Source: Haliotis rubra
Lineage: Eukaryota
Assembly: GCF_003918875.1 (NCBI RefSeq)
Contig: NW_025767001.1
Coordinates: 992,001 to 1,056,000 of the forward strand
Direction of reading: 5' to 3'
DNA length: 64,000 bases
Made by a program: the position numbers and the translations under genes. The notes under the pieces were generated by a model that was given only the letters and a program-made list of their open reading frames with translations, was not told the DNA's origin and searched no databases. Positions 21,790 through 62,462 of this stretch are shown here, one piece after another (within the stretch, counting starts at the first letter, position 1; each line of letters begins with the position of its first letter).

Positions 21790-22271
21790 GTGGTGGTGGT
21801 GGCGGAATTGGGTTTAACGTCGTACTTGAGAATATTTCGCTCATATGACGACGTGCATGCGTGTGTATGTGCGGCTGCTTGTACTAGCCCAGACGTAAGC
21901 TGGTTTTATAGTGCTAGCCCACTGTGGTACCATGCCGCAGTGAAGCATGAATACCCCACTCAGACGGTAACCTCCCATTACCCCTACATGCCACTACCCC
22001 TACAGCTTATAACAACATAGTTTATGGTCTGTTGCATAACTAATCTCCTGCCTGTTACCTATTCCATACAGTGGACTGGTCCACTTAAGATGCACAACAT
22101 GACACAAGACACGAGCCGACCAGTCCTTGATGTACCCATTAATGCCGAGCGCCAGGCGGGGACCAACAAGTACCATATTTTAACGTCTTTTGGTATGACG
22201 CGGTCGGGGATCGAACCCGCGACCTTCCGCTCTCCGGGCGGACGCTCTAACCACTACACCACGGAGGCGGT
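21790..22271 (-). mobile_element. SINE family C interrupted by a foreign insert of about 146 bp (21966-22111)
   Basis: Both halves match family C; TSD CACAATGCAT. Confidence 0.88.
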
Positions 22272-22483: not shown

Positions 22484-22650
22484 GGGGCGGTGGGGTAGCC
22501 TAGTGGTTAAAGCGTTGGCTCGTCACGCCGAAGACCCGGGTTCGAATCCCCACATGGGTACAATGTGTGAAGCCCCTTTCTGGTGTCCCCCGCCGTGATG
22601 TTGCTGGAATATTGCTAAAAGCGGCGTAAAACCAAACTCAATCAGTCAGT
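22484..22650 (+). mobile_element. SINE family A, full length
   Basis: Consensus match, imperfect TSD AGT(A/G)ATCACC. Confidence 0.93.
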
Positions 22651-22842: not shown

Positions 22843-23182
22843 GGAGATGGGGTAACCTTGTGGTTAAACCGTTCTTTCGTCACGGGGGCGGTGGGGTAGT
22901 CTAGTGGTTAAAGCACTGGCCCGTCACGCCGAAGACCCGGGTTCGAATCCCCACATGGGTACAATGAGTGAAGCCCATTTCTGGTGTCCCCCGCCGTGAT
23001 ATTGCTGGAATATTGCTAAAAGCGGCGTAAGACCAAACTCAGTCAGTCAGTCTTTCGTCACGCCGAAGACCCGGGTTCGAATCCCCACATGGGTACAATG
23101 AGTGAAGCCCATTTATGGTATCCCCCGCCGTGACATTGCTGGAAAATTGCTAAAAACAGCGTAAAACTAAACTCACTCACTC
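22843..23182 (+). mobile_element. Nested SINE family A pair (inner copy 22885-23050)
   Basis: Inner copy flanked by TSD TCTTTCGTCACG that splits the head of the outer copy. Confidence 0.9.
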
Positions 23183-23186
23183 AGGA

Positions 23187-24495: not shown

Positions 24496-24715
24496 TATGG
24501 TTTTCAAATTACATAATATTCATCAGATTCCTTTAATGTTATATGAAACCAAATTTGATCTTCTTCATGTAAGAGTAGAACCAGACTGGCGCTTCTGTCA
24601 GAAATAATTATGAGTGTTCATTCCGTTACAATGCAAAGTTCTCTGTCAATGAAAGCGACAAAACCACAAGTAATACCATTTCAGTATCGAATCAATGAGA
24701 TCTGATATCAGTATC
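24496..24715. repeat. Right arm of the 220-bp inverted duplication
   Basis: Reverse complement of 21185-21404. Confidence 0.95.
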
Positions 24716-24880
24716 GGGACGGAGGGGTAGCCCAGTGGTTAAAACGTTTGCTCTTCACGCAGAAGACCCGGGTTCGATTCCGCACACGGGAACAATATGT
24801 GAAGCCCATTTCTGGTGTCCCCTGCTGTGATATTGCTGGAGTATTGCTAAAATGGCGTAAAACCATACTCACTCATTCAC
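24716..24880 (+). mobile_element. SINE family A
   Basis: Family consensus; head abuts the right arm. Confidence 0.9.
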
Positions 24881-25484
24881 TGTTGTCAGTATGATAAAAT
24901 GTATCACTTAGCTCCTGTTTATACCCAGAATACGACAAACATATTTTTCGTAAACAACTCAGCACATTACGTGCATCTACTCTGAAAACAGATATAAATA
25001 TAGATTTATTTACAGAAAACCTGTGGGGCGAACCAAGTCCACGTCAGTGTATGAAGCTACACGGTGCAGATCTGGATGAGATGAATCGAACTTTCTCCAA
25101 CTTCTATATGTATTTATATAATGATCAGTGACATTTCTGAAGTAAAAATACAAAAAGACTATATTTCTGCACATATACTTTCTCAGGTATTGCTGACCAA
25201 CTGCATGTTTTAATTGTAAGTGTGGTCAAATGTACATTAATACATACTGGGACATCACCACATCTTTGTAATTTATCTCTTGCCAGTGACAAGGCTTGTT
25301 CACGAAGGTCGATATCTTCTTTAATGTCGAAATCTGCTTGCTAATCATTCTGAAGTTGTCCCGGCCTACCTTCAGATATAAGTTTTAAGCTTTGTTAATA
25401 TTTTGCAGCTCAAAGTCTCCTGTGACCATTACGAGTTTGCCCGCGCTCTGCTTTGTACAATTCATGTAGATGGATTTCTTCTGT

Positions 25485-27500
25485 AATGTCTCGACAGTAC
25501 TGTCGACCATTACAAAATAGTGCTGCTTTAAATTCCGATCAAAACTCTGCACTTCGATTTCACATAGTTCAATTACTTCAGTAATGTTAAGTTTGGCCAG
25601 TACTGCCGACCATTACAAAATAGTGCTGCTTTAAATTCCGACAGAAGGAATGTTAAGTCTGGCTGGCCAGTAATGTTAAGTCTGTACCGACCATTACAAA
25701 ATAGTGCTGCTTAAATTCCGATCAAAACTCTGCACTTCGATTTCACATAGTTCAATTACTTCAGTAATGTTAAGTCTGGCCAGTACTGCCAACCATTACA
25801 AAATAGTGCTGCTTTAAATTCCGACAGAAGGAATGTTAAGTCTGGCCAGTACTGCCGACCATTACAAAATAGTGCTGCTTTAAATTCCGATCAAATCTCT
25901 GTGCAATTTATATGGCTCAATTCCTTCTGTAATGTTAAGTCTGGCCAGTACTGCCGACCATTACAAAATAGTGCTGCTTTAAATTCCGATCAAATCTCTG
26001 TGCAATTTATATGACTCAATTCCTTCAGTAATGTTAAGTCTGGCCAGTACTGCCAACCATTACAGAATAGTGCTGCTTTAAATTCCGACAGAAGGAATGT
26101 TAAGTCTGGACAGTACTGCCGACCAATACAAAATAGTGCGGCTTTAAATTCCGACAGAAGGAATGTTAAGTCTGGCCAGTACTGCCGACCATTACAAAAT
26201 AGTACGGCTTTAAATTCCGATCAAATCTCTGTGCAATTTATATGGCTCAATTCCTTCAGTAATGTTAAGTCTGGCCAGTACTGCCGACCATTACAAAATA
26301 GTACTGCTTTAAATTCCGATCAAAACTCTGCACTTCGATTTCACATAGTTCAATTACTTCAGTAATGTTAAGTCTGGCCAGTACTGCCAACCATTACAAA
26401 ATAGTGCTGCTTTAAATTCCGACAGAAGGAATGTTAAGTCTGGCCAGTACTGCCGACCATTACAAAATAGTGCTGCTTTAAATTCCGATCAAATCTCTGT
26501 GCAATTTATATGGCTCAATTACTTCTGTAATGTTAAGGCTGGCCAGAACTGCCGACCATTACAAAATAGTGCTGCTTTAAATTCCGATCAAAACTCTACG
26601 CTTCGATTTCACATAGTTCAATTCCTTCAGTAATGTTAAGTCTGGCCAGTACTGCCAACCATTACAGAATAGTGCTGCTTTAAATTCCGATCAAATCTCT
26701 GTGCAATTTATATGGCTCAATTCCTTCAGTAATGTTAAGTCTGGCCAGTACTGCCAACCATTACAGAATAGTGCTGCTTTAAATTCCGACAGAAGGAATG
26801 TTAAGTCTGGCCAGTACTGCCGACCATTACAAAATAATGCTGCTTTAAATTCCGATCAAATCTCTGTGCAATTTATATGGCTCAATCACTTCTGTAATGT
26901 TAAGGCTGGCCAGTACTGCCGAGGGGCGGTGGGGTAGCCTAGAGGTTAAAGCGTTGGCTTGTCACGCCGAAGACCCGGGTTTGAATCCCCACATGGGTAC
27001 AATGTGTGAAGCCTATTTCTGGTGTCCTCCGCCGTGATGTTGCTGGAATATTGCTAAAAGTGGCGTAAAACCAAACTCAGTCAGTCAGTCAGTACTGCCA
27101 ACCATTACAAAATAGTGCTGCTTTAAATTCCGACAGAAGGAATGTTAAGTCTGGCCAGTACTGCCGACCATTACAAAATAGTACTGCTTTAAATTCCGAT
27201 CAAAACTCTGCACTTCGATTTCACATAGTTCAATTACTTCAGTAATGTTAAGTCTGGCCAGTACTGCCAACCATTACAAAATAGTGCTGCTTTAAATTCC
27301 GACAGAAGGAATGTTAAGTCTGGCCAGTACTGCCGACCAATACAAAATAGTGCTGCTTTAAATTCCGACAGAAGGAATGTTAAGTCTGGCCAGTACTGCC
27401 GACCATTACAAAATGGTGCTGCTTTAAATTCCGATCAAAACTCTGCACTTCACATAGCTCAATTCCTTCTGTAATGTTAAGTCTGGCCAGTACTGCCGAC
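25485..27500. repeat. Modular tandem array: constant 59-bp core plus one of three spacers (7, 40 or 44 bp), about 22 cores
   Basis: Core AATGTTAAGTCTGGCCAGTACTGCCGACCATTACAAAATAGTGCTGCTTTAAATTCCGA; unit lengths 66, 99 and 103 bp. Confidence 0.97.
26923..27089 (+). mobile_element. SINE family A inserted in an array core
   Basis: TSD CAGTACTGCC(G/A)A duplicated from the core. Confidence 0.95.
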
Positions 27501-27619
27501 CTTCCAATGTAGAGTAGACTGTAAACCGACATCGCTCGGGACCGGTGAAAAATGGCGGTTCAGAGGGATGTCGGTTTGGAGGGTGTAGTTGGAAACTGAA
27601 TCCAAAATTAGTCCTTTAT

Positions 27620-28080
27620 TGCTTTAAATTCTGACAAAACCTTTGTGCACTTCATATAGCTCAATCCCTCCAGCATTGGTAATCTCGAACTGCGCTGGTT
27701 TCGAACTGTTGATCATTTCGAAGTTGTCCCGTCCTGCTCTCAGATATAATCATTGTTCAACACATGTAGCACAATTCCTTCTCTGTGGTCAAGTTCAGTC
27801 CCCCTTGCGCCGTTGTTTTGTATTCTGTGTCAGTATGCTGACAGATTAAGCATCATTATCAGAACGAATATTGGATTCTGATGTCCGGTTCTGGCATGAC
27901 TGAAGAACGCCTCAGAGTCTGTATAGCGCAGTGCGGCGAATGTGTACACTAAATCAAATTTATCTGTTATAGTTTTTGTTCCTTGTTGTTTGTCGCGATA
28001 ATCCATATTCATCATATTCAAGCTTTATGGAGCCGACTTGTAAATAATCAGACAGGCCTGGGAATATTATTATGAATATT
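27620..28080 (-). pseudogene. Decayed coding-like relic flanking the array (continues at 25250-25540)
   Basis: Repeated peptide motifs DYLQVG, LYLRAGRDNFEMI and LYLKVGRDNFRMI with many stops and frameshifts; family not recognised. Confidence 0.35.
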
Positions 28081-36844: not shown

Positions 36845-37885
36845 AAGGACACACCTTCTGTGCATGTACTATCATCAAGGACACACCTTCTGTGCATGTA
36901 CCACCAGCAAGGACTCACCTTCTGCGCATGTACCACAGTCACCCCACTCCGAATGTGCCACAAGAAGTCACCTCCTGATGATGCCGTGGCCAGTCCGCGT
37001 CTTGTGAAGATACCCTGAAGATTCTCCTCTTTTGAGGATACTTTGGTCAATTCACATCCCTTCTGAAGATGCAACGACAAGCCTCCCTCCTCTGAAGATG
37101 TCCCGTCAAGCCTCCCTCCTCCGAAGATGCCACGAGAAGTCACTCTCCTCTGAAGACGCCACGACATAATCATCCTCCTCTGAAGACGCCACGACAAGCG
37201 TCCCTCCTCCGAAGATGCCACGACAAGTCACTCTCCCCTGAAGACGCCACGACATAATCATCCTCCTCTGAAGACGCCACGACAAGCGTCCCTCCTCTGA
37301 AGATGCCATGAGAAGGTGTCCCGACGAGTCAGCCCTTCTTAAGATGCCCCATCAAGCCACCCTCCTCTGAAGATACCATCAGTAGGTGTCCCGACGAGTC
37401 ATCCCCTCTGAAGATGTCCCGTCAAACCACCTTCCCCTGAGGATGCCACGACAAGCCTCCCTTCTCTGAAGATGCCACTACAAACCACCCTCCTCTGAAG
37501 ATGCCACGACAAGTCAACCTCCCCTGAGGATGCCACGACAAGCCTTCCTTCTCTGAAGATGCCACTACAAACCACCCTCCTCTGAAGATGCCACGACAAG
37601 CCTCCCTCCTCTGAAGATGCCATGAGAAGGTGTCCCGACGAGTCAGCCCTTCTTAAGATGCCCCATCAAGCCACCCTCCTCTGAAGATACCATCAGTAGG
37701 TGTCCCGACGAGTCACCCCCTCTGAAGATGTCCCGTCAAACCACCTTCCTCTGAAGATGCCACGACAAGTCACCCTCCCCTGAGGATGCCACGACAAGCC
37801 TCCCTTCTCTGAAGATGCCACTACAAACCACCCTCCTCTGAAGATGCCACGTCAAGTCACCCTTTTCTGAAGCCTGCACAACAAG
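36845..37885. repeat. 29-bp minisatellite with higher-order duplication
   Basis: Unit CTGAAGATGCCACGACAAGTCACCCTCCT and variants; block 37291-37436 recurs at 37605-37749. Confidence 0.95.
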
Positions 37886-38151
37886 TCATCAACGTATGAT
37901 CGTGATCAAAAATAAAATATCTGTCAAGTACATTTCGATTGTTCAAATAACTCCAGCAAACATTTTGCGATACGATCCATAGTGAACCCAAGACCACTTC
38001 TTGCCATAGTGTTTGTAGTTGATATTTCGTAGTATAATTAACGAAGGGACAGATTCAAGTTATTGTCATTTAGGGATAAGGGTCGTGTCAAGATATGCTC
38101 AACTAAATCTGAATCCGCCTTGGCGCTGTTCTTTAGTTTGTCCGTTCCCAT

Positions 38152-44267: not shown

Positions 44268-45610
44268 AACAGCAAAGGGAACAGAGCAACATAAAAGCAA
44301 GGAAAGATTAACAGGCAAGGCGAGGCGAGGCGAGGCGAGGCGAGGCGAGGCGAGGCGCACAGCAAAGGGAACAGAGCAACATAAAAGCAAAGAAAGACAT
44401 GACCTTTTACCTCAATTCAGAGTATGTAATCCGTAAAAGATTAACAGGCAAAGGCAAGGCAAGGCAAGGCAAGGCAAGGCAAGGCAAGGCAAGGCAAGGC
44501 AAGGCAAGGCAAGGCAAGGCAAGAGGCAAGGCAAGAACAGAAAAGGAACAGCAAGGCAAGGCAAGGCAAGGCGAGGCGAGGCGAGGCGAGGCGAGGCGAG
44601 GCGAGGCGAGGCGAGGCGAGGCGAGGCGAGGCGAGGCGCACAGCAAAGGGAACAGAGCAACATAAAAGCAAAGAAAGACATGATCTTTTACCTCAATTCA
44701 GGTATGTAATCCGTAAAGATTAAAGGCAAGGCAAGGGCAAGGCAAGGCAAGGCAAGGCAAGGCAAGGCAGGCAGCAAGGCAAGGAGCAAGGCAAGGCGAA
44801 GGCGAGGCGAGGCGAGGCAGGCAAGGCGAGGGAGGCGAGGCGAGGCACAGCAGCAAGGGAACAGAGCAACATAAAGCAAAGAAAGACATGACCTTTTACC
44901 TCAATTCAGGTATGCACATCCGTAAAAAGATTAACAGGCAAGCAAGGCAAGGCAAGGCAAGGCGAATTCAGGAGGCGAGGCGAGAGGCAAGGCAAGGCGA
45001 GGCAAGGCGCAAGGGAACAGGCGAGCAACATAAAAGCAAAGGAACAGAGCAACATAAAAAGCAAAGAAAGACATGACCTTTTACCTCAATTCAGAGTATG
45101 TTATCCGTAAAAGATTAACAGGCAAGGCAAGGCAAGGCAAGGCAAGGCAAGGCGAGGCGAGGCGAGGCGAGGCGAGGCGAGGCGAGGCGAGGCGAGGCGA
45201 GGCGAGGCGCACAGCAAAGGGAACAGAGCAACATAAAAGCAAAGAAAGACATGACCTTTTACCTCAATTCAGAGTATGTAATCCGTAAAAGATTAAAAGG
45301 CAAGGCAAGGCGAGGCGAGGCGAGGCGAGAAAGGCAACAGAGCAACATAAAACCAATAAAGACTGACCTTTTACCTCAATTCAGAGTATGTTATCCGTAA
45401 AAGATTAACAGGCGAGGCGAGGCGAGGCGAGGCGAGAAAGGCAACAGAGCAACATAAAACCAATAAAGACTGACCTTTTACCTCAATTCAGAGTATGTAA
45501 TCCGTAAAAGATTAACAGGCGAGGCGAGGCGTGGCGTGGCGTGGCGTGGCGTGGCGTGGCGTGGCGTGGCGTGGCGTGGCGTGGCGTGGCGAGGCGAGGC
45601 GAAGCAAGGC
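44268..45610. repeat. Composite tandem repeat with embedded (GCAAG)n, (GCGAG)n and (GCGTG)n microsatellites
   Basis: Anchor GACCTTTTACCTCAATTCAGAGTATGTAATCCGTAAAAGATTAACAG recurs about 7 times, separated by pentamer tracts. Confidence 0.95.
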
Positions 45611-54530: not shown

Positions 54531-55151
54531 CAAAGGCGGCTGTATTCATCGTGTTCATTCATTTCGTTTCATACAAGCCATAACATTCGGTAGTGTCGAT
54601 ACAATTCGTTAAAATACAATGAACGTTTTTGCCCACAATGAACTTGCCTTTCATGTCGACAGCCGCACCAATCTCTGTTGTCTACATGTTGTGGTACAAT
54701 CGAGCATGCTCCTACTATAAAGATTCCTCAAAGAGTCATACAGTACATCTAATGCTCAAAAGGGTTTTCGACCAGGGCTACAACATTCAAGTCTTATTTA
54801 TCAGTAAACTTTTCAAAACATTTATGGTAGTGAAGGAGACACATTTTCAAATTTAACGATATCCTATGCAATTCCCTGCTTTCACGTGGATCATAATCCT
54901 GTTCTCGGTGAACAATTGACCAGTCTTTGCGTGTATTTGTAACCGGTGGATACTTGTTACGCTCAGCTGGTACCATCACTATATGAGATTTCTTTAAATG
55001 AGCATCTGATAACGATAAAGTCAGAATAGTACAATAGAAGTGTTCAGCAGAAAATTTTGTTGATTATGGAAAAGATTTTGTCGCTTTTATCTACGAGTTG
55101 TTTTAAACTTACAGTCATCCATCCATAGTGTTTTCAAAACTAATTTTCCCT

Positions 55152-55746
55152 TCCCATCCAATGGAATCTTGGCGGATAATAGGATAATCAAGACTGGTTA
55201 TTCTTTTAGCATCGGCGTGTTTAGTTTCCCAGCCAATTGAATCTTGGCGGATAATACGATCATCGAGACTGGTTAACGTTATTATGTACCTACGGCGAGT
55301 TTAGTTTCCCATCCAATGGAATCTTGGCGGATAATAGGATAATCGAGATTGTTATTCTTTAGCATCAGCGTGTTTAGTTTCCCATCCAATGGAATCTTCT
55401 CGGATAATAGGGTGATCGAGACTGGTTATTCTTTAGCATCAGCGAGTTTAGTTTCCCATCCAATGGAATCTTGGCGGATAATAGGATAATCGAGACTGGT
55501 TATTCTTTAGCATCAGCGAGTTTAGTTTCCCATCCAATGGAATCTTCTCGGATAATAGGGTAATCGAGACTGGTTATTCTTTAGCATCTGCGTGTTTAGT
55601 TTCCCATCCAATGGAATCTTCTCGGATAATAGGGTAATCGAGACTGGTTATTCTTTAGCATCGGCGTGTTTAGTTTCCCATCCAATGGAATCTTCTCGGA
55701 TAATAGGGTGATCGAGACTGGTTATTCTTTAGCATCTGCGTATTTA
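55152..55746. repeat. 74-bp tandem repeat, about 8 copies
   Basis: CCCATCCAATGGAATCTT recurs at 55381, 55455 and 55529. Confidence 0.95.
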
Positions 55747-56449
55747 GCAGAAAGTCCTTACGGCTATGGAAACTATGGGTGTATTACTGTTGATTCGCAC
55801 AGCATTTAAGTTACATCATGGTGTGATGTGCGAGTGACGTTTGTGATGCAGCTCGTCTCACGCTTACCACAACCGAGAAGTTCTCAAACACGGTATTTAT
55901 TATGACATACCTACAACAAATGTGGAGAAGCGACTCTGGCATTCAGATTCTTTTTATATTTCTACCATTCCTAATGCACGGAACCTTTTGGCAATTGGGA
56001 CACCCTTGCTCCTTTGTTTTAAAAAAAATGGGTATCACACGGGATCTCGTTTTCCCGAAGATTAAATTCAAAATATGTTATAGATGCGACAGTTTTCCTG
56101 ATTTGGCATAAATACGAGACAACCAGAGTTTCTATGGTAACGAGATCTAAACCTAAACGCCAAGATTTAGGTTTGTAGAAATTGCATAAAACCATCTCAT
56201 CACTAAATGGTTTTCACGTTATCAACACATTAAGATAAAACTCACAGATGGTTCGATTAAGTGGAATTAACTTTAATCAGATTTTAAGTGCAACTATTGA
56301 TTCCACAGGCAATCAGTAGTCCATACACGATACCGTAGGCGTCCGCAAATCATTTATAGCAACAGCCAGATATACTTCACTGGATGTACGTGCTACCAAT
56401 ACACATTCCCAGAAGAACATGCACAGCCTAAAGAATGGGATAAAGTTTG

Positions 56450-61985: not shown

Positions 61986-62462
61986 CAGATCACTCACTCA
62001 CTCACATTAACTGAAGGTTTGGAATCTGAAATTTGGCATCCAATTCATCCACGTAAATGGCTGAAAACAGATAACCTTATTTGTAGATTGGACGTATGTA
62101 CTGCTCATATAATTGCCAGGGATCAAAGATTCGATCAAACTTTCGAAATGGTTTATTCCTATAACTCTTTAAGTTTAACTTAAGCTGACTCACTATCCAA
62201 ATTGTATTAAACCCAGATCACTCACTCACATTAACTGAAGGTTTGGAATCTGAAATTTGGCATCCGATTTATCAACGTAAATAGCTGAGAATATTAACCT
62301 TATTTGAAGATTGGACGTATGTACTTCTCATATAATTGCCAGGGATAAAAGATTCGATCAAACTTTCGAAATGGTTTATTCCTATAACTCTTTCAGTTTT
62401 GCTTATGCATTAAGCTGACAGACTATCCGAATTGTATTAAACCCAGATCACTCACACACTCA
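61986..62462. repeat. Tandem duplication of about 228 bp
   Basis: CAGATCACTCAC...TTAACTGAAGGTTTGGAATCTGAAATTTGGCATCC at about 61986 and 62214. Confidence 0.9.

What the first reader, a model, noticed from the sequence alone, without database searches (positions are those of the whole stretch)
25485..27500. Repeat-spacer array with a three-letter spacer alphabet
Seen: an almost invariant 59-bp core followed by spacer A (CAGAAGG), B (40 bp) or C (44 bp) in the aperiodic order C A C A B B A A B C A B C B A B A C A A C'. B and C are diverged relatives; CAGAAGG plus the next AAT equals the reverse complement of the ATTCCTTCTG end of B, suggesting A arose by a fold-back template switch. A and B units are 66 and 99 bp and keep an open plus frame (NVKSGQYCRPLQNSAALNSD...), whereas C units add a stop. 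Inference: the core acts as a recombination or template-switch hub that shuffles modules, giving a potentially hypervariable code. It is not CRISPR.
Basis: partly seen in the sequence, partly recalled or inferred. Interest (0 to 1): 0.7.

Follow-up and report, generated by a model that had tools for sequence, protein, structure and literature searches.

The report
Single-locus minisatellite with three unit variants
This is an ordinary non-coding minisatellite at one place in a probable abalone genome, built from three length variants of one repeat unit shuffled by block duplication; nothing suggests a programmed repeat-spacer system.

Summary

- The core occurs only at this locus in the 1.38-Gb assembly. 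The assembly's size and contig count fit Haliotis rubra.
- The flanks are unique sequence that carries older, decayed copies of the same unit.
- One core is split by a tRNA-derived SINE. The terminal old unit is split by a fragment of a dispersed repeat.
- The order is not a free code. It contains nested block duplications: (CA)x2, BB, AA, (ABC)x2, (BA)x2, and a 231-bp C-A-core block repeated 880 bp away at 99% identity.
- Cores (97.9% identical to consensus) are no better conserved than tails within a type (97-99%).
- The open plus frame is broken by an in-frame TGA and by every C unit. It has no Pfam match.
- No Rfam family matches the units, and they fold no better than shuffles.
- A related organism's contig joins the two flanks through a single unit. 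A second individual carries a unit variant absent from the assembly. So the array expands and contracts, as VNTRs do.

No RNA data were available, so transcription is untested. Interest is low.

The parts
25425..25479 (+). Old, decayed copy of the repeat unit (U0) in the unique left flank
   Evidence: Weak nhmmer match at 25451-25483. In alignment A1 its tail resembles the B tail (TTTGTACAATTCATGTAG...TTCTTCTGT). The repeat finder family D5 also includes it.
25480..25582 (+). Unit 1, a boundary hybrid. Core positions 1-24 are diverged (7 differences) and positions 25-59 match the consensus; a C tail follows. It contains a perfect 16-nt palindrome, TCGACAGTACTGTCGA, at 25491-25506.
25583..27472 (+). 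Homogenised array, units 2-21 (A C A B B A A B C A B C B A B A C A A C'). Each unit is a 59-bp core plus a 7-, 40-, 44- or 38-bp tail.
   Evidence: All 20 genome-wide matches to the core 32-mer lie within units 1-21 of this array; none is elsewhere.
26258..26488 (+). C-A-core block, one copy of a higher-order duplication. The other copy is at 27138-27368 (231 bp, 99.1% identical).
   Evidence: Self-blastn. TRF also reports a 268-bp period, (ABC)x2, at 26096-26690 with 95% matches.
26923..27089 (+). tRNA-derived SINE inserted into the core of unit 17. The target-site duplication is 26911-26922 (CAGTACTGCCGA) and 27090-27101 (CAGTACTGCCAA).
   Evidence: Rfam tRNA match at 26934-26992, 28.9 bits against a cut-off of 29. 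It is 85% identical to the copy at 24716-24852. Contig depth is enormous in all four runs. The TSD was read.
27473..27501 (+). Core positions 1-29 of the terminal old unit (T22). They match the array consensus.
27502..27617 (+). Fragment of a dispersed repeat, with an internal 22-nt inverted repeat at 27523-27544 / 27556-27577. It interrupts the terminal unit. Its start (through 27551) is also present in the contig of organism B.
   Evidence: At least 84 candidate copies in the genome, 75-93% identical. Alignment to five copies. Inverted repeat I4. X3 record 9 reaches 27551.
27618..27673 (+). Remainder of terminal old unit T22: a diverged core 3' end plus a B-like tail.
   Evidence: nhmmer E = 5e-9; alignment A1.
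27703..27781 (+). Further decayed unit (T23) in the unique right flank
   Evidence: nhmmer E = 0.002; families D5 and D7; alignment A1.

Best explanation
A single-locus, non-coding complex minisatellite (VNTR) in unique, apparently intergenic or intronic DNA of a mollusc genome, probably the abalone Haliotis rubra.

A short run of old repeats with a period of about 100-110 bp already existed here. Unequal exchange or replication slippage between two neighbouring old units amplified one roughly 100-bp segment. The crossover point lay at or beside the palindrome CAGTACTG in the core.

Three length variants of the unit coexist. The C/C' and B tails are diverged forms of the ancestral tail. The 7-bp A tail arose once, by a short template switch that replaced about 43 nt with an 11-nt inverted copy of the tail end.

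Later unequal exchanges and short conversions, which are easiest in the indel-free 59-bp core, duplicated blocks of one to three units. They also kept the cores homogeneous across types. This produces the irregular-looking order.

A SINE then inserted into one unit. The array has no demonstrated function. It behaves as a fast-evolving length-variable locus.

Shown here: the anatomy, single-locus status, block duplications, the insertions, the lack of coding or structured-RNA signal, and the different array state in other samples. Inferred: the exchange mechanism, the template switch, and the order of events.
For: - Anatomy and unit order.
- Single locus: the 198-bp unit query gave one candidate region. 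The core 32-mer with up to 3 mismatches gave 20 forward hits, all in this array, and 0 for the control pattern. The left flank is unique. The right flank is unique apart from the 100-bp dispersed fragment.
- Decayed units lie in both flanks, and the boundary units are hybrids. Unit 1 is diverged only at core positions 1-24. T22 matches the consensus only at positions 1-29.
- Block duplications: a 231-bp block at 99.1% identity with an 880-bp offset, and TRF periods of 165, 268 and 367.
- Core variants are shared by adjacent units of different tail type: T45G in units 8 (A) and 9 (B); G43A in 9 (B) and 10 (C); G26A+A36G in 14 (B) and 15 (A).
- Inverted 11-mer: 7 of 5000 shuffles reach it. Short template switching is an established mutational mechanism (PMC5453318, found).
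- No coding signal: an in-frame TGA, a longest stop-free run of 116 codons, and only sub-threshold Pfam noise.
- No RNA family, and folding no better than shuffles, with z from +0.3 to +1.5.
- Variation between samples. In organism B one 834-nt contig, at flank depth (62), joins 25580 directly to 27471, and there is no depth over 25649-26611. In organism C, B-type unit pieces stand at about 2-4 times flank depth. In a second sample of organism A, a core+B contig carrying C>T at 25875, a variant absent from the assembly, stands at about 15 times flank depth.
- Interspersed variant repeats are a known property of minisatellites (PMC2363947 abstract).
Against: - Transcription and small-RNA production were not testable, because no RNA runs were listed.
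- The exact unit order rests on one Nanopore-hybrid assembly (PMC6774278). Short-read contigs cannot confirm it. Some contigs of the source sample differ from the assembly at 25940, 26206 and 26227.
- B and C tails differ by about 12-25% while their cores are nearly identical. This mosaic needs core-restricted homogenisation, which is inferred and not shown.
- Depth ratios taken from contigs are crude.
Confidence: 0.85

Rival explanations
1. The array is the internal tandem-repeat region of a mobile element. Mollusc Helitron/Helentron- or MITE-borne satellite-like arrays are the model, and the array would be one copy of a dispersed family.
For: Mollusc genomes are known, from my own background knowledge, to carry such elements. 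A dispersed repeat fragment abuts the array at 27502-27617, and SINEs are dense around it.
Against: The core and whole units occur nowhere else in 1.38 Gb. The left flank and the right flank beyond 27618 are unique. The dispersed fragment interrupts a unit rather than bounding the array. No terminal repeats enclose the array.
Confidence: 0.04
2. The array is expressed and functional. It could be a tandem cluster producing small RNAs (piRNA- or siRNA-like) or a repetitive non-coding RNA, or a variable peptide-repeat exon read in the open plus frame.
For: One plus frame is open through A, B and C units, and A and B lengths are multiples of three. Transcription could not be examined.
Against: - The open frame is interrupted by an in-frame TGA in unit 6 and by the frameshift at every C unit. 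The longest run is 116 codons, with no ATG-led ORF of 90 aa or more.
- By my own estimate, an AT-rich unit of 33 codons has one open frame among six by chance more often than not.
- No Pfam family reaches its cut-off.
- No Rfam family matches, and the units have no excess folding energy on either strand.
- A related organism carries a single unit here.
- A SINE sits inside one unit.
Confidence: 0.06
3. The irregular order is partly an assembly artefact. Long-read consensus or hybrid merging may have mis-ordered or mis-counted the units of a simpler array.
For: The assembly is a Nanopore/Illumina meta-assembly at about 30x long-read coverage, with haplotig purging. Contigs from the source sample include unit variants not in the assembly. 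No contig spans more than about one unit.
Against: All three junction types are seen in independent short-read contigs without differences or with few. X1 record 2 covers the A junction with 0 differences. X6 record 17 covers core+B. X3 record 9 covers the C tail. The A-junction contig stands at 7.5 times flank depth, against 9 A units in the assembly. Unit-specific variants form coherent blocks.
Confidence: 0.05

Closest known systems
Hypervariable minisatellites with interspersed variant repeats (the loci typed by minisatellite variant repeat mapping, e.g. human MS32/D1S8, MS31A, CEB1)
   Same: It is a single-locus tandem array of about 2 kb. It has a few unit variants in an irregular interspersion pattern, local block duplications, degenerate ends and differences between individuals or taxa. 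Evolution by unequal exchange and conversion is the accepted mechanism for these loci. Interspersion of repeat types is stated in the PMC2363947 abstract; the named human loci are from my own knowledge.
   Different: The units are longer (66-103 bp) and AT-rich (39% GC) rather than GC-rich. The variants differ by large tail replacements rather than single bases. Germline instability has not been measured here.
Short template-switch mutations (the four-point model of Löytynoja and Goldman 2017, PMC5453318; quasi-palindrome correction)
   Same: The A tail is a perfect 11-nt inverted copy of a sequence about 40 nt away. It replaces the intervening stretch in one step and returns at a 3-nt microhomology (AAT).
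   Different: Here the product was then amplified as a repeat-unit variant, giving 9 copies. The event itself is inferred from the end product only.
Satellite-like arrays carried by mobile elements in molluscs
   Same: Similar unit size and tandem organisation in a mollusc genome rich in SINEs and small dispersed repeats.
   Different: This array is not dispersed. It is a single locus embedded in unique DNA.
CRISPR repeat-spacer arrays
   Same: Only the superficial picture of a constant repeat alternating with variable inserts.
   Different: The genome is eukaryotic. There are only three 'spacers', they are themselves related to one another, and they recur. The 'repeat' is 59 bp and no better conserved than the 'spacers'.

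Membership tests
Minisatellite / VNTR with variant repeats | Head-to-tail tandem units of roughly 10-100 bp forming an array of 0.5-30 kb | tested here: met
   21 units of 66-117 bp. The array is 1993 bp, or 1826 bp without the SINE.
Minisatellite / VNTR with variant repeats | A locus-specific array in unique flanking DNA, not a genome-wide satellite | tested here: met
   The core 32-mer with up to 3 mismatches gives 20 hits, all here. The unit query gave one candidate region. The flanks are unique.
Minisatellite / VNTR with variant repeats | Two or more unit variants interspersed along the array | tested here: met
   9 A, 6 B and 6 C/C' units, plus point variants.
Minisatellite / VNTR with variant repeats | Copy number or internal structure varies between individuals | tested here: inconclusive
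   A contig from a related organism has a single unit. A second individual has an abundant unit variant absent from the assembly. These are short-read contigs, so no allele was sized.
Minisatellite / VNTR with variant repeats | GC-rich, strand-asymmetric core (the classical human hypervariable class only) | tested here: not met
   The array is 39.4% GC and the core 40.7%, the same as the window at 40.3%. It therefore belongs to the AT-rich or neutral kind of minisatellite, not the classical GC-rich class.
Transposon-borne or genome-wide satellite DNA | Many arrays or copies dispersed in the genome, or bounded by element termini | tested here: not met
   No enclosing terminal repeats.
CRISPR array | Prokaryotic host, unique spacers of uniform length, adjacent cas genes | tested here: not met
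   The assembly is 1.38 Gb and SINE-rich. There are three recurring, mutually related tails of 7, 40 and 44 bp. ORFs nearby have no Pfam hits.
Protein-coding tandem repeat | An uninterrupted frame across units, with a start or splice context and homology | tested here: not met
   Between 24 and 46 stops in each of the six frames. The longest open run is 116 codons. B unit 6 has an in-frame TGA. C units shift the frame. Pfam matches fall below the cut-offs.
Tandem non-coding RNA gene cluster (snoRNA, miRNA, tRNA) | A match to a known RNA family, or stable conserved structure in each unit | tested here: not met
   Within the units there is only a chance-level snoZ173 match (24.6 bits against a cut-off of 70). 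The tRNA match belongs to the SINE. Folding z-scores are all positive. Unstructured small-RNA precursors cannot be excluded.

The most novel reading that the evidence does not exclude
The palindrome-containing part of the core (CAGTACTG with its flanks, core positions 16-30) may be a locally fragile or nick-prone site that drives instability at this locus. Three independent events map to it within about 6 bp in unit coordinates: the phase boundary of the amplification, the SINE insertion (TSD at core positions 16-27) and the dispersed-repeat insertion (after position 29). A second SINE copy at 24716 also has a TSD containing TCAGTAT. If the array is in addition transcribed into small RNAs, it would be a young, individually variable small-RNA locus.
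Probability: 0.07. Interest if true: 0.4.

Novelty: new member of a known kind. Interest (0 to 1): 0.12.

Why it matters
It matters little biologically. The locus is a tidy example of how a complex minisatellite is born from a few old repeats, gains a new unit variant by a template switch, and is reshuffled by block duplication. It could serve as a highly informative VNTR marker for individual or stock identification in abalone, if the variability seen in contigs is confirmed. It does not point to a new kind of genetic system.

Tried and rejected
- Genome-wide searches for the unit, the core and both flanks ruled out a dispersed family or a transposon-borne array.
- Rfam at permissive E-values and folding of all three unit types on both strands gave no RNA family and no structure.
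- Six-frame analysis and Pfam on the longest open stretch and on neighbouring ORFs gave no coding evidence and no gene context. No ORF within about 7 kb has a domain hit.
- Sequencing-run search: no RNA runs and no raw or long reads were available, only Logan contigs. Transcription and unit order could therefore not be tested.
- I first read the organism B contig as showing a young, lineage-specific expansion. I dropped that reading after the tail alignment. The C tail carries derived states, is already present in organism B, and C' and B keep ancestral states. So the three types predate that split, and the single-unit state is better read as a contraction.
- Two scripts or queries failed for technical reasons: a regex time-out and term-format errors. 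A first paper search with '1.378' found nothing.
- A word search of earlier scan notes found nothing. The look-up by place returned only this same finding and two unrelated notes.
The window holds no N.

Full report
**What is there.** Window 25480-27472 holds 21 head-to-tail repeat units. Each has a 59-bp core (AATGTTAAG...TTAAATTCCGA) followed by one of four tails:
- A: CAGAAGG, 7 bp, 9 units.
- B: 40 bp, 6 units.
- C: 44 bp, 5 units.
- C': 38 bp, the last unit.

Tandem Repeats Finder sees the same array with periods of 66, 99, 103, 165, 268 and 367 bp.

- Unit 3 has a deformed 73-bp core.
- Unit 17's core is split by a 167-bp insertion at 26923-27089.
- The array continues past 27500 in decayed form (below).

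The split into 'invariant core and variable spacer' is partly an artefact of description. Cores differ from their consensus at 22 of 1062 positions (97.9% identity). B tails are 97.1% and C tails 98.6% identical within their own type. This is one repeat unit with three length variants.

**Genome and context.** The window belongs to an assembly of 1,378,282,171 bases in 2855 contigs. The published Haliotis rubra assembly has 1,378,265,264 bp in 2,854 scaffolds (PMC6774278). The difference is one record of 16,907 bp, about the size of a mitochondrial genome. I infer that the source is the blacklip abalone; the tools code organism names, so this is inference.

The window is 40% GC and the array 39%. 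It is dense in tRNA-derived SINEs and in other tandem arrays. No ORF within several kilobases of the array has a Pfam match, so I could not place the array in a gene.

**Single locus.**
- A 198-bp two-unit query gave a single candidate region in the genome.
- A 32-nt core pattern with up to three mismatches gave 20 forward hits, all inside this array. It gave none on the reverse strand and none for the control pattern.
- The 335 bp to the left are unique.
- The 406 bp to the right are unique except for positions 27519-27618, which belong to a dispersed repeat with at least 84 candidate copies.
- Aligning five of those copies shows that the family extends further on both sides elsewhere. Only a fragment lies here.

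The array is therefore not a satellite family and not the inside of a mobile element.

**Origin from older repeats.** A profile built from the long units also finds the following:
- a core start at 27473-27501;
- its continuation at 27618-27673 (E = 5e-9), on the far side of the dispersed-repeat fragment;
- a decayed unit at 27703-27781 (E = 0.002);
- a weak match at 25451-25483.

The boundary units are hybrids. Unit 1 differs from the consensus at seven positions, all within core positions 1-24, and is identical from position 25 onwards. The terminal unit is identical to the consensus over positions 1-29 and diverged afterwards. This is the footprint expected if the array grew by unequal exchange or slippage between two neighbouring old units.

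The switch point lies at the palindrome CAGTACTG in the core. In unit 1 this is part of a perfect 16-nt palindrome at 25491-25506.

**Relationship of the tails.** In alignment A1 the old flank units share TGT.CAA and CAT(A/G)TAG with the B tail. C' and C share a 2-nt loss and a T-to-C change. C has in addition a 6-nt insertion and two substitutions. So B and C' are independent descendants of an ancestral tail, and C derives from C'.

The A tail is derived. Across its junction, ACAGAAGGAAT is the exact reverse complement of the tail end ATTCCTTCTGT. That tail end is present in C', in one B unit and, slightly altered, in the old units. Only 7 of 5000 shuffles of the junction reach an 11-nt inverted match.

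One short template switch explains both the loss of about 43 nt and the inverted copy. The strand would copy 11 nt from the opposite strand and return at the AAT microhomology that begins the next core. This is an established mutational mechanism (PMC5453318, found). It remains an inference from the end product.

**The order is not a code.** Locally the array is a nest of tandem block duplications: (CA)(CA), BB, AA, (ABC)(ABC), (BA)(BA).
- TRF scores the 268-bp ABC period at 95% matches.
- A 231-bp C-A-core block (26258-26488) recurs 880 bp downstream (27138-27368) with two mismatches.
- The two AA pairs share the same variants: G26A in the first unit and T31A in the second.
- Point variants of the core are shared by adjacent units with different tails: T45G in units 8 and 9, G43A in units 9 and 10, and G26A+A36G in units 14 and 15.

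The last point indicates short exchanges or conversions confined to the core. Cores align between types without indels, which would explain why they stay nearly identical while B and C tails differ by 12-25%. In this trivial sense the core is where exchange happens. Nothing suggests a dedicated mechanism.

**Insertions.** The element at 26923-27089 has a tRNA-like head: Rfam tRNA, 28.9 bits against a cut-off of 29, at 26934-26992. It is 85% identical to another copy at 24716-24852. It belongs to a family so abundant that its contig depth dwarfs everything else in all four runs.

It is flanked by a 12-nt target-site duplication, CAGTACTGCCGA / CAGTACTGCCAA. The one mismatch falls on the array's polymorphic G26A site. 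The insertion is present in only one unit, so it postdates the last duplication of that unit.

**No evidence of function.**
Every C or C' unit shifts it into a stop. B unit 6 carries an in-frame TGA. The longest stop-free run is 116 codons, and no ORF of 90 aa or more with a start codon lies in the array.
- Pfam gives only sub-threshold noise on the open stretch.
- Rfam finds no family for the units.
- All three unit types fold no better than dinucleotide shuffles on either strand, with z from +0.3 to +1.5.
- No run on record as RNA holds the stretch, so transcription is untested.

**Variation between samples (all runs are short-read contigs).**
- Source organism, sample X1: the flanks stand at depth about 150. 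An A-junction contig with no differences stands at 1137, about 7.5 times the flank. This roughly agrees with the nine A units in the assembly.
- Second sample of the same organism, X6: flank depth is about 4-7. A core+B contig carrying C>T at 25875, a variant absent from the assembly, stands at 71. This suggests a different array composition.
- Organism B, X3: a single 834-nt contig at flank depth (62) runs from the left flank through unit 1 and its C tail, and passes directly from 25580 to 27471 into the terminal core and the dispersed-repeat fragment. No depth is seen over 25649-26611. That genome, or that haplotype, therefore has one unit where the reference has 21. The flank divergence is about 3% (21 differences in 675 nt).
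- Organism C, X7: B-type unit pieces stand at about 2-4 times flank depth.

The C tail is the most derived tail type and is already present in organism B. I therefore read the single-unit state as a contraction, not as the primitive state. Either way, the locus expands and contracts on a short evolutionary timescale, which is ordinary VNTR behaviour.

**Limits.**
- The exact unit order rests on one Nanopore-Illumina hybrid assembly at about 30x long-read coverage. No contig spans more than about one unit.
- Contigs from the source sample include unit variants not in the assembly (25940, 26206, 26227). Some may belong to the other haplotype.
- Depth ratios from contigs are crude.

**Verdict.** This is a real, correctly described, but ordinary single-locus complex minisatellite with interspersed variant repeats. 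It grew out of older local repeats, was reshuffled by block duplication, and was later hit by a SINE.

Noticed in passing
window 26911-27101 and 24707-24895: Two copies of the same tRNA-derived SINE family both sit in targets containing CAGTA. One TSD is CAGTACTGCCGA/CAGTACTGCCAA, inside the array core. The other flanking pair is ATCAGTATC / GTCAGTATG, at the 24716 copy. This may reflect a target preference of the partner LINE endonuclease.
   Followed up: partly
window 25491-25506, 26911-26922, 27501/27502: Three independent events cluster at core positions 16-30, around the palindrome CAGTACTG: the phase boundary of the amplification, the SINE insertion, and the dispersed-repeat insertion. 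By my own rough estimate the joint chance is of the order of 1%.
   Followed up: partly
window 27502-27617: Fragment of a dispersed repeat family with an internal 22-nt inverted repeat (27523-27544 / 27556-27577). The family has at least 84 candidate copies in the genome at 75-93% identity, and other copies extend further on both sides.
   Followed up: partly
window 22922-23184: Two tandem partial copies (134-bp period, 92% matches) of the 3' part of the same SINE family. Further tRNA-like matches lie at 22196-22268 (-) and 22495-22553 (+).
   Followed up: no
window 37062-37887: Large degenerate 29/58-bp tandem array (TCTGAAGATGCCACGACAAGCC.CCCTCC) with a 314-bp higher-order period. An overlapping minus-strand ORF of 148 aa has no Pfam hit.
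   Followed up: no
window 44313-45610: About 1.3 kb of (AGGCG)n / (AGGCA)n pentanucleotide runs, arranged with a 107-bp higher-order period.
   Followed up: no
window 55151-55747 and 61994-62459: Two more minisatellite-like arrays: 74 bp x 8 at 89% matches, and 223 bp x 2.1 at 90%. Tandem arrays are common in this window, which supports the ordinary nature of the finding.
   Followed up: no
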